Counted from the stretch's first letter, positions 38,007 through 64,000 are shown. The stretch is DNA of 64,000 bases from IMGVR_UViG_3300042564_002819:1-64000; one strand, 5' to 3'. Notes: generated by a model from the sequence alone, not told the origin. Numbers and translations: made by a program.

Positions 38007-38017
38007 CGAGGTATACT

Positions 38018-44276: not shown

Positions 44277-45600
44277 AAATTTTAAAAAAATAATTATCCT
44301 CGGTGCAGGTAGCATTTCTAATGCACTGTTACCGTTAATATACAAACACATCGAAAATCCTAATGTTACAATTATTTCTGAAGATAACCGAAATAGTGAC
44401 ATCACTGAACAATACAATCTTACTAGAATTTTAAAAAAAATTGAGAAAGATTCTTACAAAGAGCTTCTGTCAAATTATACATCCGACGGTGATCTAGTAA
44501 TTAACTTAACAGTCGACGTGTCTTCACAAGATTTAATCGATTATTGCATGTTAAACAATTTAAATTATATAGATACATGTATTCAACCGTGGCCAGGATT
44601 TTTTGACAACTTTTCGATGTCAGACAGTGAAAGATCAAATTATGGATTAAGAAACAAACTAATCAGTACAAAAAACGATAGAAAAAATAAATCTACAGCT
44701 ATTGTATCGCACGGTGCTAATCCCGGGTTAGTAAACCACATAGTTAAAGACGGAATTTTAAGAATATCAAAAATTCTTGGATACGAAGATACACCCACAA
44801 ATAAAATTGAATGGGCAGAGCTTTCTAAAAAAATAGGACTTAAAACAATACACGTATCTGAGAGAGATTCGCAATTTGACTTATCCGAAAAAAAGAAAAA
44901 CGAATTCGTGAATACTTGGAGCGTTGATGGTTTTATTGCCGAGGGAATATTGCCTGCAGAACTCGGTTGGGGTACACACGAACTAGAAATGCCATCGCAA
45001 GGCTGCAACCACGAATACGGAACAAAGTCATCCATTTTCTTAAAAACTCCCGGATGTTCTACAAAAGTAAAAACATGGACGCCAAGTCATAAAAGTATCG
45101 TAGGCTATTTAATAACACATCAGGAATCTATGTCAATTGCAGAATTTTTAACAACTGATCACTATAGACCGACTGTGCATTATGCATATTGTCCGTGTGA
45201 TGTAGCATCCGAAAGTCTTGAAGAATTAGTTAAAAGAAACTTAAAAGGTCAAGATAATGCAAGAATAATGACAGACTCTCTAGTCGGCGGTATGGACGAG
45301 TTAGGAGTTTTGTTTATGGGAGATTTTGGTGCATACTGGCTAGGAAGTCAACTAAGCATCGACGAAACTAGATCATTGATTAGTCATAATAATGCAACTA
45401 GTCTACAAGTAGTTGCACCGTTGTTTGCTGCAATGCTCTGGGTTAACGAGAACACACATTGCGGATTACTAGAACCTGATGATTTGCCCTATGACTTTAT
45501 TTTAGACAAGTCGATGCCGTATCTCGGTAAGTATGTATTTGTAAAATCAGACTTTACTGTGAAAGATTGGCAATTTGTAAATTTTCTAGTAAGTGAGTAA
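44251..45600 (+). CDS. hss: Homospermidine synthase
   Basis: IILGAGSI Rossmann, YIDTCIQPW, HGANPGLV, NTWSVDGF..EG, WGTHE, GMDELGV, NATSLQV. Confidence 0.87.
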   Translation: MTHYTTTYKNFKKIIILGAGSISNALLPLIYKHIENPNVTIISEDNRNSDITEQYNLTRILKKIEKDSYKELLSNYTSDGDLVINLTVDVSSQDLIDYCMLNNLNYIDTCIQPWPGFFDNFSMSDSERSNYGLRNKLISTKNDRKNKSTAIVSHGANPGLVNHIVKDGILRISKILGYEDTPTNKIEWAELSKKIGLKTIHVSERDSQFDLSEKKKNEFVNTWSVDGFIAEGILPAELGWGTHELEMPSQGCNHEYGTKSSIFLKTPGCSTKVKTWTPSHKSIVGYLITHQESMSIAEFLTTDHYRPTVHYAYCPCDVASESLEELVKRNLKGQDNARIMTDSLVGGMDELGVLFMGDFGAYWLGSQLSIDETRSLISHNNATSLQVVAPLFAAMLWVNENTHCGLLEPDDLPYDFILDKSMPYLGKYVFVKSDFTVKDWQFVNFLVSE

Positions 45601-45614
45601 TCACTTACTAGAAA
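45583..45614. terminator. Hairpin formed by the 3' ends of two convergent genes
   Basis: TTTCTAGTAAGTGA-GTAA-TCACTTACTAGAAA, 14-bp stem with GNRA loop on the + strand. Confidence 0.65.
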
Positions 45615-46182
45615 TAATTGTTGCAACTAAATGTATTCTTTCTTTTGTACTAGCATTAAACGCTGTATGCTTTTTCTGAGTTTCTGTATACCACCATTTA
45701 TTTTTTTCTAAGTGACACACTTGATCTTCTATTACCATTAAGCATCCTTCTTGAGTTTGCATAGGATAATGAACTCTTACATTATGGTCAACATGCCACG
45801 ACAAGCATGTTTTTGGTCTTGATTTCATTATTCTAACTCTGCCCAAGACAAACATACTGTCTAATGCGTTATATGCAGTTTCAAAAAGTGTTCCATGAAA
45901 TCTTGTGCATAGGTGTTTAAAATCTTCTTCTTTTAAAGGATTTTCTCGTACAACAGGATTAGTTGGAATTCCTGATTTAATATCTATCCCTGCTTTGTCC
46001 CAATCTAAATCTAAACTACCAACTCCGTGATGTATATTGTCCGGTTGATCGTCTGTAGTATTTAAACAGATTTGGTTTGGTTCTCTTGGAGAAAAATTAA
46101 TAATATTCATATCTAATAATCTGTTATACTCTTCTATTAAATTAAGTATAGGCAATCCAGATATTTCGCGAAAGTTTTCCAT
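45601..46182 (-). CDS. Aspartyl/asparaginyl beta-hydroxylase-like 2OG-Fe(II) oxygenase
   Basis: RVRIMKSRPKTCLSWHVD (HxD), RVHYPM, HTAFN...RIHLV. Confidence 0.75.
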   Translation of the reverse strand: MENFREISGLPILNLIEEYNRLLDMNIINFSPREPNQICLNTTDDQPDNIHHGVGSLDLDWDKAGIDIKSGIPTNPVVRENPLKEEDFKHLCTRFHGTLFETAYNALDSMFVLGRVRIMKSRPKTCLSWHVDHNVRVHYPMQTQEGCLMVIEDQVCHLEKNKWWYTETQKKHTAFNASTKERIHLVATIISSK

Positions 46183-46195
46183 TTTTTCCTTTTTA

Positions 46196-46726
46196 TTACT
46201 TTGGCAATATTGTCATTGATGTCAATCTATAACTACGAGTCATATTCACAGAATCTATAATAAATTGTGCAGCATCATTAGTATTTATAAAGCTAGATGG
46301 ATTGACCATACTTAAAATCCGTTCAGTGCCTATATAACCAAATCTAAACATAGTAACCTTGCACGGTTTGTTCATATTAGCTAACTGCTCGTTGGCTTTT
46401 TCTAAGCTTGCTTTTTGTGCTGAATATTCGTGAGGATGGCGTTTGATTCCATCTGTAGTATTACTACCAATGTTTATAATAATTTTGTCAAGTTCTGCCC
46501 ATCTATCCCACAATTCATATAGTAACTGTGTTTGAGCATATCCATCATGTGCATTATTAATAAACACATCGCAATGTATAGATTTGTCGATAATGCACTG
46601 TCTACTTAACGGATCTGTTATATCATATCCGGTTGATGTACTAAATCCTACAACTTTGTCATTGCCTACTAAATTAACAATTGCTTTTCCTAAACCATTA
46701 GTATGACCTGTTATTGCAATATTCAT
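46196..46726 (-). CDS. Short-chain dehydrogenase/reductase
   Basis: IAITGHTNGLG, DVFINNA, IINIGS, YSAQK (YxxxK). Confidence 0.82.
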   Translation of the reverse strand: MNIAITGHTNGLGKAIVNLVGNDKVVGFSTSTGYDITDPLSRQCIIDKSIHCDVFINNAHDGYAQTQLLYELWDRWAELDKIIINIGSNTTDGIKRHPHEYSAQKASLEKANEQLANMNKPCKVTMFRFGYIGTERILSMVNPSSFINTNDAAQFIIDSVNMTRSYRLTSMTILPK

Positions 46727-46743
46727 AATTTTATAATTTCCTT

Positions 46744-47796
46744 TTATTTTTTTAATACATCCGATAACTCTGGGATATACTTATCTATACTTTTTTTCAA
46801 TATAAGATCTTGGTACTTTGTTTTTTCCACTAACATCTTATTAAGTTTGTAATTATATTTGTAATCTTTTATAAAACTAGAATTGTAATTGTTTTTATGT
46901 TTTTCTATATATTCCGGTGGCAATGAGTTTAGCGTAAATTCTACAGGATCTTTTATAAGAACAGGATTATGTTCTAAATTAAACTCTTTACTAAAATTAT
47001 TTAATTGTTCTATATTATGAAAATTATATGCCTGCACTACTGTATGAATGTATCTCATACTTTTCTTGTTGTTGTTTTTAAAAAAATCTTCCCATTTTTC
47101 TAAATTTTTAACTACCGAGTCCCATTTACATCCATCACGTATAAATTCGTTAACTCTTTCAGTGCCGTCTATACTGTACCCAACAAAAATTTCATCTGCA
47201 TTAAGTAGTTGTGTTTCGAACTTTTCTGGTGATACAGTCAGATTTGTGTTAATGTAAAATTTTATTTTATTATCACTATGATTTTTAATAAAATTAAAAA
47301 TGTTTTCTATTTCATCTGTAAGTAATGGCTCTCCACCAAGGTATTTTATTGTATTAACCTGTGTTCCAGTAATGCTTTTTAATAATTTTTCTATATTATA
47401 GGAAACTACTCCAGCAGTTTTTAAATTATCTTCAGTTTTCTTCCAAAGACTGCTATGTTTCGGATCGCACATGCGACACCGGCTATTGCATTTATTGCTT
47501 ACCGCAATTTCTAACATATCAAAGACATTTATGTCAGACTGACAATAAAAACTATAGCTATCTCTAACAGAATGCATCCCTAGCATTTCTGTTTTCTTAC
47601 ACGATAAGCACCCTTTGTCCCATGAATCTCCTTCCATATTTTTTCTTATAGAAGCAATATAATCCGAATTTAAAAATTCTAAAGGTGTTAAATCATCTAC
47701 TGTGTACGGACTTGTTTCAGGATATTCGCAGCAAGGTCTATATTTTCCACTAATTTCTACACATACTTGATTATATAACGCTTTACATAAGGGCAT
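46744..47796 (-). CDS. Radical SAM protein with N-terminal SPASM/twitch-like domain
   Basis: CNSRCRMC, LGGEP; N-terminal CKA...RPCC...CLSC. Confidence 0.88.
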   Translation of the reverse strand: MPLCKALYNQVCVEISGKYRPCCEYPETSPYTVDDLTPLEFLNSDYIASIRKNMEGDSWDKGCLSCKKTEMLGMHSVRDSYSFYCQSDINVFDMLEIAVSNKCNSRCRMCDPKHSSLWKKTEDNLKTAGVVSYNIEKLLKSITGTQVNTIKYLGGEPLLTDEIENIFNFIKNHSDNKIKFYINTNLTVSPEKFETQLLNADEIFVGYSIDGTERVNEFIRDGCKWDSVVKNLEKWEDFFKNNNKKSMRYIHTVVQAYNFHNIEQLNNFSKEFNLEHNPVLIKDPVEFTLNSLPPEYIEKHKNNYNSSFIKDYKYNYKLNKMLVEKTKYQDLILKKSIDKYIPELSDVLKK

Positions 47797-48914
47797 TATA
47801 ATTCTTTCTTAAACTTTGGAATTTTACTATCTGCACTGCTTACACAACTAGATGTTATGCACGGCATAGGTTTGTCAAACAATTTAAATCCTGTTTCGAT
47901 ATTACCCAACGGAACATCGTGGCATGAATACGAACGTTTAACCGATCCATCCGGCTCTCTAATAATTATGCCCTGGTATCCTGCATTGCAACTCCAACCT
48001 TTAAAGTTATTGAAGTTAAACGCATTAAATCGTTCGGCCTGATCCATATACCATTTTTCGCCTTTAGAGTCGGTAAACTCTACTTGCATGTGCCACGGCA
48101 CAGTAGCATCATTACGTCCTATTGTGTAGTCAGGAAGTTCAAATGTCGGAGTCGGTCTGTTTGCCCAGATACGTTTGTTTTCTGTATATGCTCGTTGTGG
48201 CATTCCGTTCCACAGTCTCTTAAGCATATCAGGAGTATAACCATCTACTACCCTGCTAGCAGTAGGATCACTTTGTGGCTTGAGTGTAACGTTAATTCCC
48301 TGTTCGTGGAAGAATAAAGCATTTTCCCAATCCTTTTCGAACCATTCTGGAACCATAACCATATTGATTGTAATTTGTATATCATATTCTTGACACAGGA
48401 TTAACTTGTCTGCAAAATCCTGCATCTTTTCCTTTGTGTCTAAATGTTCTGTATGCAAGCTAGCAGTAATACTTGCACGATGAAAGGGCTTAGAATATTC
48501 TACGTATTGTTCAAACCATTTCATTGGCCTTGAACAATTTGATGTCATATGAATGGAAGTGTAATTAGTATTAGAAACATCATCAGCAAGATATTTGAGA
48601 ATATCCAAATACCCAGGGTGAAAAGTAGGCTCGCCACCAGATAAACTAAAATGAAAGCTATTAAAACCGTTATCACGTGCTTGACGTTTTATTTCGTCGA
48701 TTGTTTTGAGACATAGCTCTGTAGGTCGATGATCTTTTGTGTTGGATCTTGCGTACGGCCAACAATAGCTGCATCTGTAGTTGCAGAATCTTCCAAGGAG
48801 CCAAGATACAGTAAATAAGTCTCTATATAAGAGTGTCCGTTGGCCGACTTGGACAATGTCGTCAAACGGGATTTTGGTAAAGTCATAATTGCTCCATTTT
48901 AAATCTTCGGTCAT
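47796..48914 (-). CDS. Radical SAM protein with C-terminal twitch-like domain
   Basis: CNYRCSYC, SGGEP, TSN; C-terminal CNAG...SC...CITSSC. Confidence 0.88.
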   Translation of the reverse strand: MTEDLKWSNYDFTKIPFDDIVQVGQRTLLYRDLFTVSWLLGRFCNYRCSYCWPYARSNTKDHRPTELCLKTIDEIKRQARDNGFNSFHFSLSGGEPTFHPGYLDILKYLADDVSNTNYTSIHMTSNCSRPMKWFEQYVEYSKPFHRASITASLHTEHLDTKEKMQDFADKLILCQEYDIQITINMVMVPEWFEKDWENALFFHEQGINVTLKPQSDPTASRVVDGYTPDMLKRLWNGMPQRAYTENKRIWANRPTPTFELPDYTIGRNDATVPWHMQVEFTDSKGEKWYMDQAERFNAFNFNNFKGWSCNAGYQGIIIREPDGSVKRSYSCHDVPLGNIETGFKLFDKPMPCITSSCVSSADSKIPKFKKEL

Positions 48915-48920
48915 ATTTTT

Positions 48921-48948
48921 AGTATAACACCTTTCTCGTATTTGTCAA
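48921..48948 (-). promoter_or_regulatory. Sigma70-type promoter, probably leaderless
   Basis: Minus strand TTGACA-16nt-TATACT; ATG at 48914 is the 7th nt after the -10 box. Confidence 0.65.
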
Positions 48949-48979
48949 TTATGTTTATATTTAACAGATAAGTATTAGC

Positions 48980-49942
48980 ATGATTTATGACGAGCTCACT
49001 CATTTTAAAAACTATGTATTTGTAGATTGGGATATAAGTAGTCGCTGCAATTACAATTGCTATTACTGCACACCCGAGTCACATGACGGAAAAATAAATT
49101 TTCCCGATATAACTGTTGCAAAAAAAGTAGTCGAAAAAATAGAGAAAGAATACAGTTCTTGTAAAGAATTTGCAGTGTATAATCTTTTAGGTGGAGAACC
49201 TACTATATGGAATGATTTGCCAGAATTTAGCAAATATATCAAATCTATTAACAACAAAAATATATTACAATTGTTGACAAACGGCAATAGAACACTAAGA
49301 TGGTGGGAAAATTCTGCACCATACATAGATAAAATTATTGTTAGTGTGCATGTTGCACAAACCGATATTGTTAAATTAGTAGAAAAGTTTAACAAGCTAG
49401 CAGATAAAATCTATATAGACTTTCAATTTGCAATGGATGTTGCAGTGTTTGATCAAGCCGTTGAAGATTATTATTATGCTTATAACAACCTGCATGAAAA
49501 TATTTGTTTATATTCTAAGCCTTTACGGAAAGTGTTAAATAACACCGAATTGATGCCATATACAGAATTGCAAATTGAAACTATTAAAAAGTTACCATCT
49601 AAATGGAGCAGATCTATCGAAATATTCGAAACTCCTATGGTTAAAAAGCTTAACGGAACAGTTGTAGACCCTGCTGTTAATATTGGTAAATTAGTTTTAT
49701 CAAAAGAAAACAACTGGTACGGATGGGCTTGTTGGATTGGCATAGATACTATTACTATTAATCGATACGGAAATGTTAAAATAGGTTCTGGTTGCAACCC
49801 CGACCTAGTGCTCGGTAATATAAATTCTTTAGATTTTAAATTTCCACTGATTCCTGTCAAGTGTAAATATACTACTTGTGGATGTTTTGCTGATATATCT
49901 ACAACAAAAAAATTAAACTACACAGGACCTATGATTCTTTAA
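48980..49942 (+). CDS. Radical SAM protein with C-terminal twitch-like domain
   Basis: CNYNCYYC, LGGEP, TNG; C-terminal CWIG...GC...CKYTTCGC. Confidence 0.88.
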   Translation: MIYDELTHFKNYVFVDWDISSRCNYNCYYCTPESHDGKINFPDITVAKKVVEKIEKEYSSCKEFAVYNLLGGEPTIWNDLPEFSKYIKSINNKNILQLLTNGNRTLRWWENSAPYIDKIIVSVHVAQTDIVKLVEKFNKLADKIYIDFQFAMDVAVFDQAVEDYYYAYNNLHENICLYSKPLRKVLNNTELMPYTELQIETIKKLPSKWSRSIEIFETPMVKKLNGTVVDPAVNIGKLVLSKENNWYGWACWIGIDTITINRYGNVKIGSGCNPDLVLGNINSLDFKFPLIPVKCKYTTCGCFADISTTKKLNYTGPMIL

Positions 49943-51417
49943 TATAGCTTATTAAATTTTTCTAAATGTGCATTTACGATTTTTTCCATATGTGAATTTT
50001 TGCCATATACTTCGTTTATTAAATTCCATATTTCCGATATTCTCTTCTTTCTGACTTCCGGAGAATTGTCTTTATACTTCCAATTAAGAGAACTATTATA
50101 ATATTCTAAATCGTCCTTTATAGTCTCATAAATTATAGAATCCTTATCTAATATCAATGTATTTCCGAATCCAAAATGAATTAGTGGAGTTTGCGAGTAA
50201 TCGCCGACCTTTGTATCAAGATATCCTATCTCTTTTAATTTTCTAATAGTGTCTAATGTTATCTTGTGATCTTCATCTGTTTCAGTTGGATATCCAACTA
50301 TCATTAGCAAACTGTGTTGTATTCTATTTTTTTGAAGTTGTTCAAGGCAAAACCACATATCTTCATCTTTGATCTTTTTACCCATATGAAATCTAACACT
50401 TTCACTAAAGCTTTCTAGTCCAACATCAAGTCCGTGACATCCGCTATCTTTCATTAACTGAAAATCCTCTGCTGTACACTGTGATTGAGGTCGCATAATC
50501 CATTGACTGCTCCAAGTAAAACCAGGGTCTGTTTTTCTATATTCTTTTAATAAATTTAGTAATTCTCTAAATGTTTTCATACTTCCGTTTATTAAGCTAT
50601 CGGTAAAATGAAAATCTGTTCGGTTCCAGAGTTTACGAATTTCTACTATCTCAGTAAAAATACTTTTAGCAGATCTAAATTTATACTTCGGCCAAAGTCG
50701 ATGTATATCGCAAAATGTACAATTTTTAACACACCCTCTACTTCCAGTTATGTAAACAGTTTTTCCGTTTTTAAACCTGTTAGGATATAAAGTCCATTCT
50801 ATATCGCTATAGTCAGGTATTAGTACAGTTGACAAATCTTCAACTTGGTGTGCTTCGTCTGAGTTAATTCCAGGAGCAGACACATTACCTTTTAATAATT
50901 CAACTAAAGAAAATTCTGCATCTCCGTGTATAAAAAAATCAATCAAACCTCTATTGAGCGGATACTGAGCTCGATAACCACGAACGTCGGCGCCGCCCCA
51001 AATAATCTTTGTGTTAGGTAAGTATTTTTTTATTAACATAGAAAAGTAAATTGCAAAAGTTCTACTATACTCAGTTAGCAAACTCATGCCTACAAATCTT
51101 GGTTTTAATTTTTTTAAATCGTTAATAACACTATTTGTCCAATTTTTATATTTTTTAAGAAAAATTTTATGTTCTTTTTCTAAAGAATAATCCCACTCGG
51201 TTACAAATATTTTATCATCATTTTTAAAGAAATACTTTTCTTTTTCCTCATCGGACATTATATTATACAATTGTATATTTAGGTCTATTATTTTGCATGA
51301 AAATCCTTCTGCAGAAAGATGACTTTTAAGAATTGCCGGACCTACTGTAGGAGCATATGGATCTATTTTTGGTATTACTAATATTGCTATATCTACCATT
51401 TTATATATCTTTTCCAT
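49939..51417 (-). CDS. Cobalamin-binding (class B-like) radical SAM protein
   Basis: N-terminal B12-binding-like domain (P.VGPAILKS, IIWGG, GDAE), GSRGCVKNCTFC, FTDSLING, GLES, IVGYPTET. Confidence 0.85.
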   Translation of the reverse strand: MEKIYKMVDIAILVIPKIDPYAPTVGPAILKSHLSAEGFSCKIIDLNIQLYNIMSDEEKEKYFFKNDDKIFVTEWDYSLEKEHKIFLKKYKNWTNSVINDLKKLKPRFVGMSLLTEYSRTFAIYFSMLIKKYLPNTKIIWGGADVRGYRAQYPLNRGLIDFFIHGDAEFSLVELLKGNVSAPGINSDEAHQVEDLSTVLIPDYSDIEWTLYPNRFKNGKTVYITGSRGCVKNCTFCDIHRLWPKYKFRSAKSIFTEIVEIRKLWNRTDFHFTDSLINGSMKTFRELLNLLKEYRKTDPGFTWSSQWIMRPQSQCTAEDFQLMKDSGCHGLDVGLESFSESVRFHMGKKIKDEDMWFCLEQLQKNRIQHSLLMIVGYPTETDEDHKITLDTIRKLKEIGYLDTKVGDYSQTPLIHFGFGNTLILDKDSIIYETIKDDLEYYNSSLNWKYKDNSPEVRKKRISEIWNLINEVYGKNSHMEKIVNAHLEKFNKLY

Positions 51418-52024
51418 TATTTAATAAGCTATGATACCACCCGTTTGGTCGGAGACACCCTCTTCTATTTGTATAGTCTATATTATGTAAATCTAAAAAT
51501 TGTTTTATTTGTAAACATAATTCGTTGTATTTGTCTTGATTATTTGCAAAAAATAAAAATCCCTTGTATAATAATACAGGATATAGTTCTTTGTTATTTA
51601 TGCACACACTAATGTCAACAGTTCGTGTTAGTTCTGCACCGAACCCACATATTGCCATACAAGTTTTTTTAAATTGTTTGTTTAAAAAATATGTTTTGTA
51701 ATCTATGTTATAGGCATCAGTAAATAAAAAATCAAGAGAATTGCTATTAAGATTAGAAGTTCCATCTCCTATGTCTATAGTCAGATTCGGTATTTTTTGT
51801 TTCCACGACTCGTATAAAACTAATAATCTTTCTTTTTCTACTTGTTGCTGAGAATCTTGAAAGTTTTCATAAAAGCTTAACGTGTTAAGAAATTTTGCTT
51901 TATTTAAAAAACAACTGCATATATCTTGCCCATCGTATATTCCAATCATTGCTGAATTTTTAAACAATTCTGATTTGGATTCGATTAAATTTGCTATTAA
52001 ATTATATTTTATTGTTGGTATCAT
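51401..52024 (-). CDS. Hypothetical protein
   Basis: ORF between two radical SAM genes; probable start MIPTIKYN at 52024 (track start 52087). Confidence 0.55.
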   Translation of the reverse strand: MIPTIKYNLIANLIESKSELFKNSAMIGIYDGQDICSCFLNKAKFLNTLSFYENFQDSQQQVEKERLLVLYESWKQKIPNLTIDIGDGTSNLNSNSLDFLFTDAYNIDYKTYFLNKQFKKTCMAICGFGAELTRTVDISVCINNKELYPVLLYKGFLFFANNQDKYNELCLQIKQFLDLHNIDYTNRRGCLRPNGWYHSLLNNGKDI

Positions 52025-52035
52025 TTTAAAGTTTT

Positions 52036-53145
52036 TTATAAATTTACTTTCATGTTTTGTTCTTGTTCTCGTTTTACAATGCCACATGTTTTAATGCACC
52101 TAGGTATTACATTATCATCACCCCAAGATTTTTCTAACTCTTCAGAAAAGAATTTATGCAATAATATTTCTGCCCATGATTTATCTTTCAAAGACAACTC
52201 TGTAAGAGGATATTTTAATTCGGCTTCTGAAAATTTTCTAAAAGATTCGTTGTCATCACTTATATAACAACACGGAAATACTTCTAGTCTGCTATTTACA
52301 TATATCTTTTTTGCTTCTTGATATATGCAAGATATTTTCCATTTGGAGAGTTTTTCAACCGGATTGTAATTTCCTGTGGTAAATTCAGTTACTGATAGTT
52401 GGTTGTTTAGTGATTCCATAATTTCATCATGAGAATGTGTACTTTTAGATCTAACTATAGATTTCATAGTGTCATGACTAGGATGTCGCAAATCTTTTTG
52501 AATAGGAGGTTCGAGATAGTGTGTAATTTCTTTTTTAGAATTCATAACAGGAAAAGGATCAAAGTTATCAAACCGCGGAGTTCGACGTATTCTAAAATCG
52601 TTAACACCAATTTCGGATGCTATATTTTTACATTTTTCAATCTCATGTTCGTTATGCTTAAATGCTAAAAAGTCCCATCGTACTTTTACAGAACCTTTGC
52701 AGCATATTTTCATATGAGAAAGTATTTTATTAATATGAGTATTTTGTCTGTACAAATGGTTAGTTTCTATACCATCAACCCCGAAAGTTATTCTATCATT
52801 TTTATCTAAAATTTCTACTAATTTTTCCCACCAGCTATCTGTTTTGAGACTTCCATTTGTAAATATTTCAATGTTTAGATTTCTGCTTTTAGCTTTATAT
52901 ATTGCTTCAAATAAATATCTCGAAGCAATAGGATCACCGTGTGTTCCGCAAAAATAAACACGTTTTAGATTTGGCAACTCTTCGGAAAATACTTTGTCTA
53001 TGTCCTCTAACGACCACTCCGTTAATCCAAGTCCTGGTCGGTCTACGGATCCAAATATATTTCTATTACACATAGGACAGGATGCGTTACATTTGTTTGT
53101 AATCTCTACATGCATCTCTTCTATTGTGTCAGTTCTTAAAAACAT
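52036..53145 (-). CDS. Radical SAM protein with C-terminal twitch-like domain
   Basis: CNASCPMC, FCGTHGDP, TNG; C-terminal C...FPCC...CIKTC. Confidence 0.88.
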   Translation of the reverse strand: MFLRTDTIEEMHVEITNKCNASCPMCNRNIFGSVDRPGLGLTEWSLEDIDKVFSEELPNLKRVYFCGTHGDPIASRYLFEAIYKAKSRNLNIEIFTNGSLKTDSWWEKLVEILDKNDRITFGVDGIETNHLYRQNTHINKILSHMKICCKGSVKVRWDFLAFKHNEHEIEKCKNIASEIGVNDFRIRRTPRFDNFDPFPVMNSKKEITHYLEPPIQKDLRHPSHDTMKSIVRSKSTHSHDEIMESLNNQLSVTEFTTGNYNPVEKLSKWKISCIYQEAKKIYVNSRLEVFPCCYISDDNESFRKFSEAELKYPLTELSLKDKSWAEILLHKFFSEELEKSWGDDNVIPRCIKTCGIVKREQEQNMKVNL

Positions 53146-53158
53146 GTTTTTTAAATCC

Positions 53159-53180
53159 TATAAATATATGCATGTATTTA
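53159..53180. promoter_or_regulatory. Divergent late-type promoter boxes
   Basis: Exact TATAAATA on + at 53159..53166; TAAATA on - at 53175..53180, between divergent genes. Confidence 0.5.
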
Positions 53181-53208
53181 ACTTTAACAGAGAGATAAAG
53201 ATTTATAT

Positions 53209-54723
53209 ATGACTGATATAGTCTTTCTTACTTTACCAAGATTAGAACTTAGAGCACCGATAACTGCTCCTGCATTGTTAAAATCGATGGTTGAAAAGCA
53301 TGGATATACTGCATTTTGCTATGATTTAAATCTAGATTTGTGGCACAGTATAGATGCATCTACCTACGGACATGTTTGGTTTGACACTGATCTAACATTT
53401 AGATACGAAGACAAGTTTAAAGATTTTTGGAATTCGCATATCTTGCCGTGTGTACCAAGATGGATTGAAACTATTAAATCTAAAAATACATCGTGGGTTG
53501 GGATTACTATTTTTAGTCAAAGAAGTAAGTGGATTAGTATTGCAATATGCGAATTATTACGTAAAGAATTGCCTGAAGTAAAGATTGTAGCAGGTGGTCC
53601 TTTTTGCGAATTTACCGGGCCGCTGCTATATGAAAAAAATCTAGTTGATGCTTATGTAGTTGGCGAAGGCGAACTTGCTATTTTAGATATCCTTAGAGGA
53701 AATTTTTCAAATCCTGGAATAAATGGCAATGATCCTGTACAAATTGAAGATTTAGATACTATTCCTATTCCGGATTATAGTGATTTTCCAATGGAATTAT
53801 ATCCAAAAACTTGGTATGATCCAAGAATAAAAGATCACGACAAATTAGGAACAGAATTTGTATACATCACTGGCAGTAGAGGATGTGTAAGAAAGTGTAC
53901 ATTTTGTGATATACAAAGTGTTTGGCCAAAGTTTAGATTTAGAAGTGGTATTAGTATAGCAACAGAAATGTTAGAACAAAATCAAAAATACGGAAGTAAA
54001 AGATTCTTGTTTACTGACAGCTTGCTAAATGGAAGTGTTAAACAGTTAAAGGATATATGCACAACTCTTATAAAAAATAAAAAATCAGGGCGTATGACTC
54101 ATGTAAATTGGCAGGGACAGTTTATTGCACGTCCAGAACATCAAATGTCAGAAGAAGTTTATTCATTAATGTACGAAGCGGGCCTTAGATTTGTAAGCAT
54201 CGGAGTCGAAAGTGGTAGCGAAAAAGTTCGAAACGATATGAAAAAAATGTTCGACGATTCTGCTATGGACTTTACATTTAACATGTGTGCAAAGTATAAA
54301 ATAGAAATGGCCTGGTTATTGCTTGTGGGGTATCCGACTGAAACAGAGGAAGAGTTTCAAAAAACACTTACTATGCTAGAAAAGTACCAATGGATTAACC
54401 AACAAGGGCTAATACGTAGCATTGCGTTAGGTCCAACGTTAGATATAGTTCCAGGATCGCCACTTTACAAAAATCAAGAAAAATTAGGAATTACTTGGGA
54501 CTCAAACAATCATTGGGTATATAAAGATAATACTCGAGAGATTAGAATTAAGAGATGGCTTAGATTAAAAGAAAAATGCATAGAGCTCGGATATCCAGTC
54601 GTAGAAAAAGCAACAGATCATCTTTTAGCCGAATTAGAAAAGATAACTGCACAAAAAAGTCAAGTAAACCATATTTACGATCATTATAATGAATTATCTG
54701 GAGCAATGGGGCCTAGCGTATAA
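53209..54723 (+). CDS. Cobalamin-binding (class B-like) radical SAM protein
   Basis: APALLKS, IVAGGP, VVGEGE, GSRGCVRKCTFC, FTDSLLNG, GVESGS, LVGYPTET. Confidence 0.87.
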   Translation: MTDIVFLTLPRLELRAPITAPALLKSMVEKHGYTAFCYDLNLDLWHSIDASTYGHVWFDTDLTFRYEDKFKDFWNSHILPCVPRWIETIKSKNTSWVGITIFSQRSKWISIAICELLRKELPEVKIVAGGPFCEFTGPLLYEKNLVDAYVVGEGELAILDILRGNFSNPGINGNDPVQIEDLDTIPIPDYSDFPMELYPKTWYDPRIKDHDKLGTEFVYITGSRGCVRKCTFCDIQSVWPKFRFRSGISIATEMLEQNQKYGSKRFLFTDSLLNGSVKQLKDICTTLIKNKKSGRMTHVNWQGQFIARPEHQMSEEVYSLMYEAGLRFVSIGVESGSEKVRNDMKKMFDDSAMDFTFNMCAKYKIEMAWLLLVGYPTETEEEFQKTLTMLEKYQWINQQGLIRSIALGPTLDIVPGSPLYKNQEKLGITWDSNNHWVYKDNTREIRIKRWLRLKEKCIELGYPVVEKATDHLLAELEKITAQKSQVNHIYDHYNELSGAMGPSV

Positions 54724-54731
54724 GGAAAAAC

Positions 54732-55442
54732 ATGGAAGATTATATTGTACTTAAAAATGTGTTAACTCCCGAAGATATAAAAAATCTAAATGACATAAAA
54801 AGTCTGCTAAAGGACGATCCAGAATCTCATAGACCAAGAGCATCAAACGGAAAAAGACACAATAATGTATATAACATAACTGACAAAACAGTATACACAT
54901 TGGATCAGATTACCAAATGGCTCGATAACTATATGCCTTGGGATAAAGAAATTTATGAATACTGGGGAGTAAATTTTTACGACTTGCAAAATCCGTATGC
55001 ATTACACAGTGACGGAAACGATACTAGACGGGCGTTTTATCAAGGAATTATTCCACTTTCAGTAGAACCGAGCGACAAAGATGCATATACTATAATTTTT
55101 GATCAAACAGCAGATACCAACACTGAATGGATTTCGTCTGTGTATAATAAACCGGATGATTACGAACCGTTTTATAATAAGGGTATTCGAGATCCTAGTT
55201 ACTTCGGAGGCTGGTCAGACGAATATAAAATAGACGACGAAGTAGGATACAAACACTGGGGTAAAAAATGGAATACCACATTTAAAGAGGCCTACAAAGG
55301 TTTTAGCATAAAATATGAATATAAGTGGGAAGTTGGAGACATTTTCTTTTTTGATAGTAAGTTTACTCACTGTGCAACTGAATTAGCAGAAAAAGAAATA
55401 AATCAAAAAACAGGCTTGCTTTTTTGTTTAAATAGGAAATAA
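54732..55442 (+). CDS. 2OG-Fe(II) oxygenase-like protein
   Basis: YALHSD (HxD), WEVGDIFFFDSKFTHCA. Confidence 0.65.
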   Translation: MEDYIVLKNVLTPEDIKNLNDIKSLLKDDPESHRPRASNGKRHNNVYNITDKTVYTLDQITKWLDNYMPWDKEIYEYWGVNFYDLQNPYALHSDGNDTRRAFYQGIIPLSVEPSDKDAYTIIFDQTADTNTEWISSVYNKPDDYEPFYNKGIRDPSYFGGWSDEYKIDDEVGYKHWGKKWNTTFKEAYKGFSIKYEYKWEVGDIFFFDSKFTHCATELAEKEINQKTGLLFCLNRK

Positions 55443-55443
55443 A

Positions 55444-56250
55444 ATGCGTGTAGAAGAACTTAACAGATACTTTTCAACTGCTGTACCGTTTGCAAGTGTT
55501 GAAGATGTCGAAATAAAACAATATTATTATACAGACTTAGATAAAATAGAAATTGCTGTTCCAAGAAACGGTGCACCAATGGGAATGTTTTTGTCAGGCG
55601 GCCCTGATAGTGCCCTTACAGCCTACTTGTTAGTAAAAACAATTAAAGAATTTGGATTTAACAACCCTGTTTATCCTATAACTACTGAATTTCTTGCAAG
55701 GCCTTACAATATAAAATACGCTTGGGGAGTGTTAAGAAAAATAGAAGAACTATTAGATTTTAAATTTGAACAGCATCTTATTTTTCCTATGCCTAACCAT
55801 GCACTACCAATTAGTGACGAAGATAAAAAAGTAATCATGTCATTTAATATACAAGAATACCATGATAGATACAATCTAAGTTGTATTGTAAATGGACTAA
55901 CTGCAAATCCACCTATATCTGAAGTCGGAGATACAAAATACGGCGATAGTTCTAAAGAGCGTGACGAAGCAGAAGTTATTTTAAAAAAATTAAAAAGCAA
56001 GCGTGTGCAATATCCATTCTTATTTTCTAATAAAAGAGTAGTTTCATATTTTTATAATCATTTTGACTTGCTCGAAACCCTTTTCCCTATCACTCGTTCG
56101 TGTGAAGCTGAGATGCACGAAACCGAATATTTTACAAAAGATTGCTTTCAAGTAAGACGAGAAGAAAGATATTGCTGGTGGTGCAGAGAAAGACAATGGG
56201 GATTTGAAAAATACAGACCTGACGATTTTGTAAATAGGTTTAAAGGATAA
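55444..56250 (+). CDS. QueC-like PP-loop ATPase, paralog 1
   Basis: FLSGGPDSAL; C-terminal TRSCE...C....YCWWCRERQWG. Confidence 0.7.
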   Translation: MRVEELNRYFSTAVPFASVEDVEIKQYYYTDLDKIEIAVPRNGAPMGMFLSGGPDSALTAYLLVKTIKEFGFNNPVYPITTEFLARPYNIKYAWGVLRKIEELLDFKFEQHLIFPMPNHALPISDEDKKVIMSFNIQEYHDRYNLSCIVNGLTANPPISEVGDTKYGDSSKERDEAEVILKKLKSKRVQYPFLFSNKRVVSYFYNHFDLLETLFPITRSCEAEMHETEYFTKDCFQVRREERYCWWCRERQWGFEKYRPDDFVNRFKG

Positions 56251-56258
56251 GATTAATC

Positions 56259-57014
56259 ATGAAACCAAAACACCCAAATGTCGAATTTGAGGAAATGTGG
56301 GAAGTATCTGATGGCAGTGCAACTATAATTCCTATGAATAGTAAATGGAAAGCAATAGGCGTTCAAGTATCAGGAGGTTTAGACAGTGCTGTTCTCCTGT
56401 ACTTAACTGTCAAAACAATACAAAAACATAATCTAGATGTAAAAGTTGTTCCTATTAGTTTAGAAATTTACAATAAAGCAAAGAATTTAGAGAGTTCTAG
56501 AGCAGTAATACAAAAAGTTAAAGACATTACAGGATTTAAAAACTGGGGAGAATCGGTAGAAGCTATTGGAAAACCTTCTCAAGCAGAATTTATCGGAAAA
56601 AACAGTTTTTTTAGTTCTGTTATTAATACACTATTTTTAAAAAAAGCAATAGATTTTGAAATTAACGGAGTGACTAAAAACCCTCCTTTAGAAGTGTGTA
56701 AAGATTTTAAATTTAACGAATACAGAGAATTTGCAAGAGACAATCCGCGAACTATATACAACGGAATGCGAAATGCTAGTCCACACGCTTTTGTAGATAA
56801 AAAAGGAATAGTAGAACATTATATCAATCATAATCTAGTTGATGAAATAATTCCGCTAACGCTCTCTTGTGATGAAAAATTAGATATAATAATAAAAAAT
56901 GATTGGCCAATTCCTTGTGGCACCTGTTGGTGGTGCAGAGAAAGAAGATGGGGCCTCGAATCTCACAATCTTGATTATCAAAAATATAGTCCGTTAAATG
57001 CATATACCAAGTAA
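56259..57014 (+). CDS. QueC-like PP-loop ATPase, paralog 2
   Basis: QVSGGLDSAVL; C-terminal TLSCD...CGTCWWCRERRWG, like the QueC zinc site (T.SC...CG.C..C..R). Confidence 0.72.
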   Translation: MKPKHPNVEFEEMWEVSDGSATIIPMNSKWKAIGVQVSGGLDSAVLLYLTVKTIQKHNLDVKVVPISLEIYNKAKNLESSRAVIQKVKDITGFKNWGESVEAIGKPSQAEFIGKNSFFSSVINTLFLKKAIDFEINGVTKNPPLEVCKDFKFNEYREFARDNPRTIYNGMRNASPHAFVDKKGIVEHYINHNLVDEIIPLTLSCDEKLDIIIKNDWPIPCGTCWWCRERRWGLESHNLDYQKYSPLNAYTK

Positions 57015-58182
57015 AACTTTTTGCAGCATGGCTTGGAACCATCAGTTTATCGATCCTACAGGACGAGTTAAGCCGTGTTGCAGATTTGCAGAAAAATTTA
57101 GACCAGTAGAAAACAATCTTAACAATAAAACATTGAGTGAAGTGTTTTATGGCGAGTGGATGACTGATATTCGACAAAAAATGCTAGCCGGAGACACTGT
57201 GCCGGGCTGCATTAGATGCTATCAAGAAGAAGCAGCCGGTAAAAAAAGTCTGCGAGAACGTTACCACGAAAACAAAGATCTTCCTATAGACGAGCTAGTT
57301 AATCTAACAAATCCAACTATTCGTTGGATAGAGCTTGCTATTAGCAACGATTGTAATCTTGCATGTAGGATGTGCGACAGTCGTTATGCGTGGAAATGGT
57401 TTAAAGAAGAAAAAGAGATGTACGGGTCCACTCTTAACACTGTTGAACACAGCAAAAGTGACATATCAAACATCTTTCCATTTATAAACGATCTAGTACA
57501 TATAAAATTTACAGGCGGAGAACCATTATTAACAAAAGATCAATGGCTATTAGTTGATAAAATGCTTGAGGAAAGAGACTGTAGTGACATTTTATTAAAT
57601 TATTCAACTAATTGTACAATAATGCCAAAAGACAGTTGGGTTGAAAAATGGAAAAAATTTAAACAAGTTGAATTTGCATTAAGTTTTGATAGTGCAAATC
57701 CTGCAGAATCTGAATATATACGTTGGCCTGCAAAATTTGAAACAACCGAAGCAGTTACAAAAAGATTTTTAGAACTTAAAAAAGAACATGGATTTCATGT
57801 ATTTTTAAGAAGTACTATAAGTTTATTGAATGTTTGGTACATGCCAGAAAGTATGCAATGGTGGCACGACAACGATCCTTCGTCAGTTAAAATAATGAAT
57901 CCTACACACTTGACATATCCCGAAAACTTATCTGTTACAGTATTACCACAGCATATTAAAGAAAGAATCACTTTAAAATTTGTTGATTATCAAAAAAATT
58001 GTAATATTAAAAAGATAAATGAAAGTTTAGAATACATCAAAAATTACATGAATAGCAAGGATGACAGTCATTTACTTCCGAGTTTAAAATCATATATAAC
58101 TCAGACCGATGCTTATAGAAATCAAGATTTTTTTAAAAACTATCCTCAATTTTCAGATATATTTGAACAATTGTGTGTTTGA
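56998..58182 (+). CDS. Radical SAM protein with N-terminal SPASM/twitch-like domain
   Basis: FCSMAW...KPCC...CIRC..E..GKKSLR; CNLACRMC; TGGEP. Confidence 0.88.
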   Translation: MHIPSKTFCSMAWNHQFIDPTGRVKPCCRFAEKFRPVENNLNNKTLSEVFYGEWMTDIRQKMLAGDTVPGCIRCYQEEAAGKKSLRERYHENKDLPIDELVNLTNPTIRWIELAISNDCNLACRMCDSRYAWKWFKEEKEMYGSTLNTVEHSKSDISNIFPFINDLVHIKFTGGEPLLTKDQWLLVDKMLEERDCSDILLNYSTNCTIMPKDSWVEKWKKFKQVEFALSFDSANPAESEYIRWPAKFETTEAVTKRFLELKKEHGFHVFLRSTISLLNVWYMPESMQWWHDNDPSSVKIMNPTHLTYPENLSVTVLPQHIKERITLKFVDYQKNCNIKKINESLEYIKNYMNSKDDSHLLPSLKSYITQTDAYRNQDFFKNYPQFSDIFEQLCV

Positions 58183-59255: not shown

Positions 59256-59257
59256 GT

Positions 59258-63916: not shown

Positions 63917-63930
63917 TTATAAATCCTATA

Positions 63931-64000
63931 TTAAGAAAGTTGCTTATCGTTTTTATTTTTTCCATGTCCGCTACTAAACTCAAATTTTTTGCCACAAGTT
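63931..64000 (-). CDS. C-terminal fragment of the next gene (5' partial), possibly another radical SAM twitch end
   Basis: Manual translation ..TCGKKFEFSSGHGKNKNDKQLS*; TCG resembles the CIKTCG end of 52036..53145. Confidence 0.3.
   Translation of the reverse strand, partial: TCGKKFEFSSGHGKNKNDKQLS

What the first reader, a model, noticed from the sequence alone, without database searches (positions are those of the whole stretch)
49939..54723. Two cobalamin-dependent (class B-like) radical SAM enzymes in a phage
Seen: two ~500-aa paralogs with an N-terminal B12-binding-like domain and GSRGCxxxCTFC, on opposite strands around divergent late-type boxes. Known: class B enzymes methylate unactivated carbon or phosphorus centres. 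Inference: the phage uses host B12, and its own MetK (31860..32954) to supply SAM, for C-methylation of the island substrate; this constrains the host to B12 producers or importers.
Basis: partly seen in the sequence, partly recalled or inferred. Interest (0 to 1): 0.63.

Follow-up and report, generated by a model that had tools for sequence, protein, structure and literature searches.

The report
Phage-borne B12-type radical SAM enzyme pair
A 330-kb T4-like lake-water phage carries two (in fact three) intact enzymes built like vitamin-B12-dependent radical SAM methylases, inside a huge sugar-tailoring island with 17 radical SAM genes, so making its full product probably depends on the host's B12.

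Summary
ORF A (49939-51417, -) and ORF B (53209-54723, +) are intact paralogs (33% identity, E 1e-84). Each has a Pfam B12-binding domain followed by a radical SAM core with CxxxCxxC. Both keep the three sequence motifs that hold cobalamin in solved class B enzymes. B's model (pLDDT 91.6) matches TsrM, MgmA, OxsB, CysS and TokK, but matches the cobalamin-free AprD4 equally well. No curated family cut-off is reached, so this is an uncharacterised class B subfamily.

The genome is a T4-like jumbo phage with gp23 capsid and PolB. The genes sit in a roughly 47-kb island with 17 radical SAM ORFs, a third (KedN5-like) B12 enzyme, PP-loop ATPases, sugar-nucleotide enzymes and four GT-B-like proteins.

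The family is abundant in uncultivated phages (353 IMG/VR stretches). Its closest cellular copies are in Bdellovibrionia, whose island-bearing genomes have MetH but no MetE or CobS hit. MetK is genuine, but it lies next to a FolE/QueE-like pair, 17-21 kb from A and B.

Methylation, the substrate and expression remain untested.

The parts
49939..51417 (-). ORF A: B12-binding domain plus radical SAM core (492 aa; probable true start at Met7, base 51399). Cluster motif is C229-x3-C233-x2-C236. Cobalamin motifs are G110-x-S112-x-L, G141-G142 and G165-D-x-E168.
   Evidence: Pfam hits. Paralogy to B. Motifs invariant in 9 viral orthologs. Database gene call of 486 aa.
51401..52087 (-). Class I SAM-dependent methyltransferase-like protein (Methyltransf_24, TylF/CmcI-like O-methyltransferase fold). 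It overlaps the start of A and lies in the same leftward gene string.
   Evidence: No Pfam or NCBIfam hit. Atlas feature score 0.90 and structural TM 0.70 to Methyltransf_24 clusters. This is a lead, not a proof.
52036..53145 (-). Radical SAM enzyme, one of four island paralogs ('W-cofactor-maturase-like'). It is the first gene of the leftward string that ends in A, and its family is the conserved upstream neighbour of B orthologs.
   Evidence: PF04055 37.7 bits and TIGR04317 80.8 bits, below cut-off. Paralogs. Synteny in L009, L087, L089 and L098.
53146..53208 (.). 63-bp divergent intergenic region with one exact TATAAATA (53159-53166, +) and a 7/8 copy on the minus strand. An AT-rich block (ATAAATATA...TGTATTTAAC) is conserved upstream of B orthologs.
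   Evidence: Sequence. Octamer not enriched. Conservation in L009, L010 and L012 despite saturated synonymous sites.
53209..54723 (+). ORF B: B12-binding domain plus radical SAM core (504 aa). Cluster motif is C226-x3-C230-x2-C233. Cobalamin motifs are G98-x-T100-x-F102(..R105), G129-G130 and G152-E-G-E155.
   Evidence: Pfam. Invariant columns. Alignment to TokK residues 65-394. AF2 model pLDDT 91.6. Fold matches.
54732..55442 (+). Unknown 236-aa protein directly after B. All nearest Atlas clusters are viral. Conserved next to the module in L009 (65% identity).
55444..57014 (+). Two paralogous PP-loop ATPase-like genes (55444-56250 and 56259-57014; weak QueC/NAD-synthase-type hits).
   Evidence: Pfam. 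(paralogy, also with genome 64977-65630).
56998..58182 (+). N-terminal-twitch radical SAM enzyme, the conserved downstream partner of B orthologs in phage and Bdellovibrionia loci.
   Evidence: NF033640 303.9 bits, above the cut-off of 170. 50-84% orthologs follow B in L009, L087, L089 and L098.
43005..64000 (.). Window part of the island, which runs on to about genome base 90,000. In all it holds 17 ORFs with CxxxCxxC (46744-89370), 3 B12-type radical SAM genes, 3-4 PP-loop genes, saccharopine-dehydrogenase-like, Asp/Asn-hydroxylase-like, DegT, 2OG oxygenase, UDP-Glc dehydrogenase and epimerase/dehydratase genes, and four GT-B-like paralogs. The simple hydropathy scan found no multi-span membrane protein (at most one weak segment in four ORFs). 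About 99.7% of the 43005-99974 span is coding.
31860..32954 (+). MetK (SAM synthetase), 17-21 kb upstream of A and B and directly after a GTP cyclohydrolase I / QueE-like radical SAM pair.
   Evidence: Pfam. TIGR01034 424.9 bits, above the cut-off of 309.4. Neighbours.

Best explanation
A and B are anciently diverged paralogs of an uncharacterised, largely phage-borne subfamily of cobalamin-dependent (class B) radical SAM enzymes.

Proposed mechanism (inferred):
- Each protein binds one [4Fe-4S] cluster through CxxxCxxC.
- Each binds one cobalamin, base-off and His-off, in the N-terminal Rossmann domain.
- One SAM methylates cob(I)alamin. A second SAM is cleaved to a 5'-deoxyadenosyl radical that abstracts a hydrogen from an unactivated carbon, which then takes the methyl from methylcobalamin.

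Proposed substrate (inferred): intermediates of tailored sugars or glycans made by the surrounding soluble island of about 47 kb. GT-B-type transferases then pass the product to an acceptor that is still unknown. A may extend or follow the methyl group placed by the adjacent class I methyltransferase. B works in a conserved module with a 369-aa radical SAM enzyme, PP-loop ATPases and an N-twitch radical SAM enzyme.

Cofactor supply (inferred): cobalamin must come from the host, probably a freshwater Bdellovibrionia bacterium that uses but does not make B12. The phage MetK helps to meet the SAM demand.

Shown: gene integrity, domain architecture, cofactor motifs, purifying selection, genomic context and distribution.
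Inferred: cobalamin binding, methyl transfer, a sugar substrate and the host.
For: Architecture and motifs:
- PF02310 plus PF04055 above cut-off in both proteins.
- The three motifs that contact cobalamin in MetH, OxsB, TsrM and TokK are G-x-S/T-x-residue on the beta3-alpha3 loop, GG on beta4, and GE on alpha5 (review PMC9204698).
- These are invariant or nearly so in the B set (G98, G129, G130, G152-E155) and in the A clade (G110, S112, G141, G142, G165, D166, E168).

Sequence similarity of the N-terminal domain:
- The family profile aligns through the N-terminal domain to TokK (E 9e-18), CysS (2e-16), OxsB and MgmA. It aligns to AprD4, RimO, MiaB and TsrM only through the radical SAM core.
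- The N-terminal 200 residues alone hit TokK's cobalamin domain (E 3e-4). Below that comes a weak trail of 13 cobalamin-binding proteins among 24 hits, with AprD4 absent.

Family and fold:
- The best NCBIfam models are methylases: TIGR03975 at 97-107 bits and TIGR04479 at 90-103 bits.
- Fold matches: TsrM, MgmA, OxsB, CysS and TokK at Z 18-25.

Sugar context:
- DegT, UDP-Glc dehydrogenase, epimerase/dehydratase and 2OG oxygenase genes.
- A four-member family with GT-B fold (pLDDT 95.7; every listed Foldseek hit at E<=1e-3 but one is a glycosyltransferase).
- A TylF/CmcI-like methyltransferase next to A.
- A KedN5-like third B12 methylase at 242 bits.

Conservation: synteny of the B module in phages and Bdellovibrionia and dN/dS of about 0.05.

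B12 in candidate hosts: MetH in 5 of 5, MetE in 0 of 5, CobS in 0 of 5, BtuB-like receptors, one of them beside a weak cobalamin riboswitch.

MetK is an equivalog.
Against: - No curated cut-off for any characterised class B family is reached. Best scores are 107 bits against 282 and 103 against 600.
- The single best structural match by VIA-align is AprD4 (Z 25.3), a cobalamin-independent sugar diol dehydratase. MiaB and RimO also score Z of about 20. Fold alone does not prove cobalamin binding.
- The A-clade profile on its own reaches PDB chains only through the radical SAM core.
- B12-domain radical SAM enzymes include non-methylases such as OxsB, BchE and HpnJ.
- Twitch/SPASM partners and the TIGR03975 resemblance are also typical of peptide maturation.
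- The acceptor of the product is unknown.
- MetK is not in the island and sits beside FolE and a QueE-like gene.
- No expression data exist.
- The host assignment rests only on shared island genes.
Confidence: 0.5

Rival explanations
1. A and/or B bind cobalamin but do not methylate. They catalyse another cobalamin-assisted radical reaction on the island intermediate, such as an OxsB/AlsB-type ring contraction, a BchE/HpnJ-type ring formation or carbon-skeleton rearrangement, or thioether formation.
For: OxsB is among the top fold matches (Z 25.0), and the profile aligns through its cobalamin domain. BchE, HpnJ, BzaD and the ladderane-lipid enzyme all score 1e-12 to 1e-22. No methylase cut-off is met. 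Two paralogs kept apart since before the phage lineages split suggest distinct chemistries.
Against: The best-scoring profiles and best PDB sequence matches are methylases: TIGR03975, PhpK, MgmA, TokK and CysS. Most characterised class B members are methylases (reviews). A class I methyltransferase-like gene and a KedN5-like methylase in the same island fit a methylation theme.
Confidence: 0.2
2. The N-terminal domain is a vestigial Rossmann domain that binds no cobalamin, as in AprD4. A and B would then be ordinary radical SAM enzymes acting on a sugar, for example as diol dehydratases or dehydrogenases.
For: AprD4 with its aminoglycoside substrate is the top VIA-align match (Z 25.3, 387 residues aligned) and rank 6 in Foldseek. 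The context is sugar tailoring. Pfam B12-binding scores are only just above cut-off (34 and 37 bits against 32.1).
Against: All three cobalamin-contact motifs are conserved under strong purifying selection. The N-terminal domain is sequence-similar to TokK, CysS, OxsB, MgmA and classical corrinoid domains, but not to AprD4. NF033070 (AprD4) scores 20-34 bits against a cut-off of 500.
Confidence: 0.12
3. The enzymes are cobalamin-dependent C-methyltransferases, but their substrate is a peptide or protein (PoyC/proteusin-like or MgmA-like). This could be a virion protein or an unrecognised precursor, with the SPASM/twitch radical SAM enzymes as co-maturases.
For: TIGR03975 (RiPP C-methyltransferase) is the best or second-best model. 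MgmA, a protein glutamine C-methylase, is the best PDB sequence hit (4.8e-20). Eight N-twitch/SPASM-type radical SAM paralogs, an Asp/Asn-hydroxylase-like gene and a 2OG oxygenase resemble proteusin toolkits.
Against: No precursor-like gene was found. The island is about 99.7% coding, and its only gap over 100 bp holds a 75-aa ORF without a Cys-, Gly- or Ser-rich core. The sugar-nucleotide enzymes and four GT-B-like proteins need a glycan explanation. Twitch-domain radical SAM enzymes also act on sugars (BtrN; own knowledge).
Confidence: 0.18

Closest known systems
TokK / ThnK / CysS (cobalamin-dependent radical SAM C-methyltransferases; PDB 7KDX, 9N1B)
   Same: The order is the same: Rossmann cobalamin domain, radical SAM TIM barrel, C-terminal domain. 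The profile alignment covers TokK residues 65-394 (E 9e-18) and CysS (2e-16). The GG and GEGE motifs are shared, and the downstream motif maps A70/S72/Y74/W76 of TokK to G98/T100/F102/R105 of B.
   Different: Identity is only about 14-17%. A and B are about 150 residues shorter. There is no Trp at the TokK W76 position (B has Arg, A has Tyr/Ser-Arg). The known enzymes act on carbapenam or a carrier-bound aromatic acid in actinomycete or myxobacterial antibiotic clusters, not in a phage sugar island.
TIGR03975 RiPP-maturation C-methyltransferases (PoyC type) and TIGR04479 PhpK-family P-methyltransferases
   Same: These are the best-scoring curated models for both proteins (97-107 and 90-103 bits, E 1e-26 to 1e-31).
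   Different: Scores are far below the curated cut-offs (282 and 600). No precursor peptide or phosphinate pathway genes lie nearby.
MgmA (methyl-coenzyme M reductase glutamine C-methylase, PDB 9CCB) and TsrM (6WTE)
   Same: MgmA is the best PDB sequence hit (4.8e-20). MgmA and TsrM are top fold hits (Z 24.3 and 23.3). Like TsrM, B carries G-x-T-x in the downstream motif with an Arg close by.
   Different: Those are archaeal protein-modifying and actinomycete tryptophan-modifying enzymes with unrelated contexts. Sequence similarity to TsrM is limited to the core.
AprD4 (radical SAM 1,2-diol dehydratase of apramycin biosynthesis, PDB 6FD2)
   Same: This is the best VIA-align match (Z 25.3). It acts on an aminoglycoside sugar, which resembles the sugar-tailoring context here.
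   Different: AprD4 uses no cobalamin. Its N-terminal domain shows no sequence match to the A/B profile. NF033070 scores 20-34 bits against a cut-off of 500.
GenK / GenD1 / Fom3-type class B methylases acting on sugars or small polar substrates (own knowledge; not tested here)
   Same: They are the functional analogy for C-methylation of sugar carbons within glycoside pathways.
   Different: No aminoglycoside or phosphonate genes are present.
B12-binding radical SAM gene of Streptomyces phage SF3 (NC_028952) and the T4-like marine viral genome with 12 radical SAM genes (Nishimura 2017, PMC5332604)
   Same: SF3 is the only deposited phage with a detectable homolog. The marine genome is a precedent for T4-like phages loaded with radical SAM genes.
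   Different: The SF3 protein is only 22.7% identical over 70% of B, in a 61-kb siphophage. The 2017 paper reports gene counts only, with no B12 link or function.

Membership tests
Radical SAM superfamily | CxxxCxxC motif that binds the [4Fe-4S] cluster, within a PF04055 core | tested here: met
   A has C229/C233/C236 and B has C226/C230/C233. These are invariant in 33 sequences. PF04055 scores 62.3 and 57.6 bits against a cut-off of 29.5.
Class B (cobalamin-dependent) radical SAM enzymes | N-terminal Rossmann-type cobalamin-binding domain (PF02310) preceding the radical SAM core | tested here: met
   PF02310 scores 34.0 bits (A) and 37.1 bits (B) against a cut-off of 32.1. The AF2 model of B shows five beta-alpha units before the barrel. 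It matches OxsB, TsrM, MgmA, CysS and TokK over residues 1-480. The N-terminal profile alone hits the TokK cobalamin domain at E 3e-4.
Class B (cobalamin-dependent) radical SAM enzymes | Cobalamin-contact motifs: G-x-S/T-x-residue (beta3-alpha3 loop), GG (beta4) and GE (alpha5), with no His ligand needed (PMC9204698) | tested here: met
   B has G98-I-T100-I-F102, G129-G130 and G152-E-G-E155. The A clade has G110-x-S112-x-L, G141-G142 and G165-D-x-E168, invariant in 9 sequences. Mapping to TokK is and the motif definition.
Class B (cobalamin-dependent) radical SAM enzymes | Physical binding of cobalamin | not testable with these tools
   Cobalamin is not among the ligands offered for co-folding, and no coordinates of solved homologs were available for superposition.
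Class B radical SAM methyltransferases (TokK, CysS, PoyC, PhpK, GenK types) | Methyl transfer with two SAM per turnover (SAH plus 5'-deoxyadenosine), or a score above a curated equivalog or subfamily cut-off | tested here: not met
   The best NCBIfam scores are 107.4 bits (TIGR03975, cut-off 281.85) and 103.2 bits (TIGR04479, cut-off 600). None passes. The chemistry itself cannot be tested here. The proteins are therefore filed as 'works like', not as members of any named methylase family.
AprD4-family cobalamin-independent diol dehydratases | Match to NF033070 above cut-off, with an N-terminal domain lacking the cobalamin motifs | tested here: not met
   NF033070 scores 20.5 bits (A) and 33.8 bits (B) against a cut-off of 500. 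The cobalamin motifs are present. Only the fold is shared.
MiaB/RimO methylthiotransferases | Three conserved Cys in the N-terminal domain for an auxiliary cluster, plus a C-terminal TRAM domain | tested here: not met
   No invariant Cys occurs before C226. TIGR00089 scores 43 bits against a cut-off of 251. There is no TRAM hit.
T4-like (gp23-capsid) jumbo myophages, as the carrier of the genes | gp23-type major capsid protein and family B DNA polymerase on the same contig | tested here: met
   PF07068 scores 338.8 bits at genome 141476-142453. PolB is 43-50% identical to phages Phosso, Atu_ph07 and Rak2-like phages. The IMG/VR record is 330,024 bp with a CheckV completeness estimate of 93%.

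The most novel reading that the evidence does not exclude
A large, unstudied group of environmental T4-like jumbo phages, sharing genes with predatory Bdellovibrionia, encodes a self-contained soluble pathway. It has up to 17 radical SAM enzymes, three of them cobalamin-dependent, plus PP-loop ATPases and GT-B transferases. The pathway would build a new class of heavily C-alkylated, aminated sugar decoration on the virion or another target. Completion of the pathway would then depend directly on scavenged vitamin B12. That would make B12, a scarce shared currency in lakes and oceans, a factor in phage fitness.
Probability: 0.25. Interest if true: 0.85.

Novelty: new member of a known kind. Interest (0 to 1): 0.6.

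Why it matters
Class B radical SAM enzymes carry out some of the hardest methylations in biology. They have been characterised almost only in antibiotic, cofactor and lipid pathways of cells.

- The subfamily is large: over 2000 protein clusters and 353 stretches in viral contigs. It is mostly phage-borne and has no characterised member.
- It sits in islands packed with radical SAM genes. This marks phages as a reservoir of new radical chemistry.
- It predicts a cofactor dependency of a virus on host-acquired B12, beside its demands for SAM, iron-sulfur clusters and reductant.
- It gives a concrete host clue (freshwater Bdellovibrionia) for a jumbo phage lineage that has no cultured member.
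- It offers a defined conserved gene module for biochemical work: a 369-aa radical SAM enzyme, B, PP-loop ATPases and an N-twitch radical SAM enzyme.

Tried and rejected
- Nucleotide similarity to 50,697 deposited phages: none. By protein, only Streptomyces phage SF3 matched, at 22.7% identity.
- Literature searches for B12 radical SAM enzymes in phages found no paper. The only relevant text was the 2017 note of 12 radical SAM genes in a marine T4-like genome.
- T4-style DNA sugar modification was considered because the GT-B hits include T4 alpha-glucosyltransferase. It is not supported: no thymidylate-synthase or dCMP-hydroxymethylase family hit exists in the 93%-complete genome.
- 7-Deazaguanine DNA modification was considered because of FolE, a QueE-like gene and the QueC-like PP-loops. 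No TGT/DpdA and no QueD was found, and the only QueC hits are the weak island PP-loops. Divergent DpdA could have been missed.
- A phage B12-dependent ribonucleotide reductase was sought as a second B12 link. The reductase is class Ia NrdAB, which needs oxygen.
- Phage-encoded Fe-S assembly (ATC, PF01521): not found.
- The idea that the Bdellovibrionales MAG contigs are mis-binned phage pieces was rejected for the five genomes tested. They lack a close homolog of the phage PolB, and the island lies on contigs of 936 kb and 349.5 kb. Homologs at about 30% identity in other Bdellovibrionia also lie on megabase contigs.
- A RiPP precursor in the intergenic space: only a 75-aa ORF with no telling features.
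- Expression: no RNA run holds the stretch.
- The A-clade profile alone did not reach any cobalamin domain in the PDB.
- No test of protein-protein binding was run.

Full report
**1. Observation**

The window holds ORF A (49939-51417, minus strand, 492 aa) and ORF B (53209-54723, plus strand, 504 aa).
- Each carries Pfam B12-binding (34.0 and 37.1 bits; cut-off 32.1) followed by Radical_SAM (62.3 and 57.6 bits).
- They are paralogs: 33% identity over 470 residues, E 1e-84, aligned from the first residue.
- Both show TGSRGCV(K/R)xCTFC.
- A's real start is probably Met7. The database gene call is 486 aa, and all orthologs begin there.
- The two genes are not directly divergent. The leftward string is a radical SAM gene (52036-53145), then a 228-aa gene (51401-52087), then A. 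B opens the rightward string after a 63-bp spacer.
- That spacer has one exact TATAAATA, 43 nt before B's ATG, and a 7/8 copy on the other strand. The octamer is no more frequent in the window than chance (6 found, 10.5 expected).
- An AT-rich block around the octamer is kept in three relatives whose synonymous sites are saturated. A promoter there is plausible, but its 'late' class is unproven.

**2. The carrier is a phage**

- The window is bases 1-64000 of a single 330,024-bp IMG/VR record, estimated 93% complete.
- It encodes a gp23-type capsid protein (338.8 bits).
- Its PolB is 50% identical to Sinorhizobium phage Phosso, 45% to Agrobacterium phage Atu_ph07 and 43% to Rak2-like coliphages.
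- It encodes class Ia NrdAB.
- The same 4.8-kb stretch occurs without differences in contigs from several lake-water runs. A diverged strain occurs in a river run, where the listed changes are mostly synonymous: 13 synonymous to 7 non-synonymous in A, and 10 to 1 in B.
- B against orthologs of 75-83% identity gives dN/dS of about 0.04-0.06.

**3. Is the N-terminal domain a cobalamin domain?**

The review of solved class B enzymes (PMC9204698) defines three contact motifs.
- A downstream motif, G-x-S/T-x-residue, on the beta3-alpha3 loop. Examples are MetH G-x-S-x-L, OxsB G-x-S-x-N, TsrM G-x-T-x-R and TokK A-x-S-x-Y-x-W.
- GG on beta4.
- GE on alpha5.
- No histidine ligand is required.

Both proteins keep these motifs.
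- B and 32 homologs keep G98-x-T100-x-F102, invariant G129-G130 and G152-E-G-E155.
- HMMER maps TokK A70/S72/Y74/W76 onto G98/T100/F102/R105.
- The A clade (nine viral sequences) keeps G110-x-S112-x-L, G141-G142 and G165-D-x-E168 without exception.

Sequence searches point the same way.
- The family profile aligns through the N-terminal domain to TokK (9e-18), CysS (2e-16), OxsB and MgmA. It aligns to AprD4, RimO, MiaB and TsrM only through the core.
- The first 200 residues alone find TokK's cobalamin domain (3e-4). Below it comes a sub-significant trail in which 13 of 24 hits are corrinoid proteins such as methionine synthase, B12 mutases and corrinoid methyltransferase partners. AprD4 does not appear.

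The fold alone is less decisive.
- The AF2 model of B (pLDDT 91.6) matches TsrM, MgmA, OxsB, CysS and TokK.
- It matches the cobalamin-free AprD4 equally well (Z 25.3) and MiaB only a little less (Z about 20).

The case for cobalamin therefore rests on the motifs and on sequence affinity. I put it at about 0.8.

No curated family cut-off is met. The best scores are TIGR03975 at 97-107 bits (cut-off 282) and PhpK at 90-103 bits (cut-off 600). The proteins work like class B methylases but belong to no named family.

**4. Context**

A and B lie in an island that starts near 43005 and runs to about genome base 90,000.
- 17 ORFs between 46744 and 89370 carry CxxxCxxC. They fall into paralog sets: eight N-terminal-twitch enzymes (56998-58182 passes NF033640 at 304 bits), four 'W-maturase-like' enzymes, the pair 47796/48980, and three B12-type enzymes.
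- The third B12 enzyme (genome 81728-83653, 641 aa) resembles the KedN5 family of methylcobalamin C-methyltransferases (242 bits, cut-off 700).
- Three to four PP-loop ATPases are present, together with saccharopine-dehydrogenase-like, Asp/Asn-hydroxylase-like, DegT aminotransferase, 2OG oxygenase, UDP-Glc/GDP-Man dehydrogenase and epimerase/dehydratase genes.
- A four-member family without Pfam hits folds with pLDDT 95.7 into a GT-B glycosyltransferase shape. Every listed Foldseek hit at E<=1e-3 but one is a glycosyltransferase.
- The 228-aa gene next to A looks like a class I SAM methyltransferase of the TylF/CmcI type (Atlas score 0.90, TM 0.70).
- The simple hydropathy scan found no multi-span membrane protein; four ORFs show one weak hydrophobic segment each.
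- The 43005-99974 span is about 99.7% coding.

This is a soluble sugar-tailoring and transfer pathway whose acceptor is unknown.

**5. Alternatives for the island**

- T4-style DNA glycosylation lacks its entry enzyme. No thymidylate-synthase or hydroxymethylase family hit was found.
- A 7-deazaguanine route was considered because FolE (29948-30634) and a QueE-like radical SAM gene (30894-31793; phrog_2076, 176 bits) sit just before MetK. No TGT/DpdA, QueD or canonical QueC was found.
- A peptide substrate remains possible. The RiPP-type best model, the MgmA similarity and the twitch partners favour it. However, no precursor gene was seen, and the sugar genes would be left unexplained.

**6. 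Distribution and host**

- B has 1674 homologs and A has over 2185 at E<=1e-40, nearly all from metagenomes. The contigs reach 350 kb and include Tara Oceans records.
- IMG/VR holds 353 encoding stretches. About 40-45% of the 79 fetched viral loci also carry twitch-type or W-like radical SAM genes within 10 kb.
- In the tree, A lies in an all-viral clade and B in a clade sister to Bdellovibrionales genomes. A and B split before these lineages diversified.
- All cellular homologs above 44% identity that have a taxonomic label are Bdellovibrionales, Bdellovibrionia or Pseudobdellovibrionaceae MAGs. One more, at 63%, is labelled only 'bacterium'. The closest are 63-69% identical.
- Five such genomes lack a close homolog of the phage PolB. 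The island sits on contigs of 936 kb and 349.5 kb, with 11 or more radical SAM genes.
- 29 of 301 sampled Bdellovibrionia genomes have a homolog.
- The conserved core around B is a W-like radical SAM gene, then B, then PP-loop gene(s), then a 56998-type twitch enzyme.
- The five island-bearing genomes all have B12-dependent MetH. No MetE or CobS hit was found, and they have BtuB-like receptors, one of them next to a weak cobalamin riboswitch.
- If the phage infects this lineage, its host uses imported B12. The link is an inference from shared genes only.

**7. MetK**

MetK is a genuine equivalog. A phage with 17 SAM-consuming enzymes plausibly benefits from it. However, it lies 17-21 kb from A and B, in a FolE/QueE-like cluster. 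Its dedication to the island is not shown.

**8. Verdict**

Architecture and cofactor motifs are supported. Methylation, substrate, expression and host are open.
- At the enzyme level this is a new, uncharacterised, mostly viral subfamily of a known kind.
- The surrounding multi-radical-SAM sugar island is the more unusual object and deserves its own study.
- Among deposited phages only Streptomyces phage SF3 has a distant homolog. The only text precedent found is a count of 12 radical SAM genes in a marine T4-like genome.

Noticed in passing
window 46744-64000, continuing to genome base 89370 (L001, L002): 17 ORFs with an intact CxxxCxxC radical SAM motif lie within 42.6 kb. They form paralog sets: 8 N-twitch, 4 W-maturase-like, the 47796/48980 pair, and 3 B12-type. 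This is among the densest radical SAM islands noted for a phage.
   Followed up: partly
L002:1728-3653 (-) = genome 81728-83653: Third B12-binding radical SAM enzyme (641 aa). It is KedN5-family-like (NF033712, 242 bits against a cut-off of 700). It is flanked by GT-B-like genes and an epimerase/dehydratase.
   Followed up: partly
L002:3650-4912 (-), L002:5871-7187 (-), L001:15268-16506 (-), L001:17675-19738 (-): A four-member paralog family with no Pfam or NCBIfam hit. The 420-aa member folds at pLDDT 95.7 into a GT-B glycosyltransferase-like structure. 168 homologs exist, none with a functional name from its source.
   Followed up: partly
window 29948-31793: GTP cyclohydrolase I (134 bits) and a full-length QueE-like radical SAM gene (phrog_2076, 176 bits) lie directly upstream of MetK. 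Yet no QueD, canonical QueC or TGT/DpdA was found in the genome.
   Followed up: partly
L089 / L166 (GCA_030424715.1, 936-kb contig, about 643-665 kb): A Bdellovibrionia chromosome carries a syntenic island with 11 or more radical SAM genes. It lies next to MscL, a SIS-domain gene and two phage-type integrases. This suggests a mobile island shared with freshwater jumbo phages.
   Followed up: partly
window 36823-39304: A MoxR-type AAA ATPase is followed by a DUF2201 metallopeptidase/VWA protein. This is a chaperone-like pair of unknown role, with no NCBIfam match.
   Followed up: no
window 40835-42280: A 481-aa protein with an Mtd_N (major tropism determinant) N-terminus and a chlorovirus glycoprotein repeat lies just upstream of the island. 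It may be a receptor-binding or decorated structural protein.
   Followed up: no
window 24799-26825: A second small sugar module lies outside the island: a GT1-family glycosyltransferase-like gene and an NAD-dependent epimerase/dehydratase.
   Followed up: no
window 36070-36753 and L001:6347-7030 (-): Two sulfotransferase-like proteins. The first has weak Pfam hits (about 20-21 bits). The second has no hit, but its N-terminus resembles a PAPS-binding loop.
   Followed up: no
window 6002-8260: A full-length ClpB/ClpA-type double-AAA chaperone is encoded by the phage.
   Followed up: no
L001:6123-6350 (-) = genome 68123-68350: The only intergenic gap over 100 bp in the island holds a 75-aa ORF of unknown nature. 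It is not obviously a RiPP precursor.
   Followed up: no
window 51036-51666: Low-depth contigs in two lake runs join 51036 to 51666 with 113 other letters between them, anchored by only 21 letters. This is probably a related strain or another organism rather than a real deletion across the start of A.
   Followed up: no
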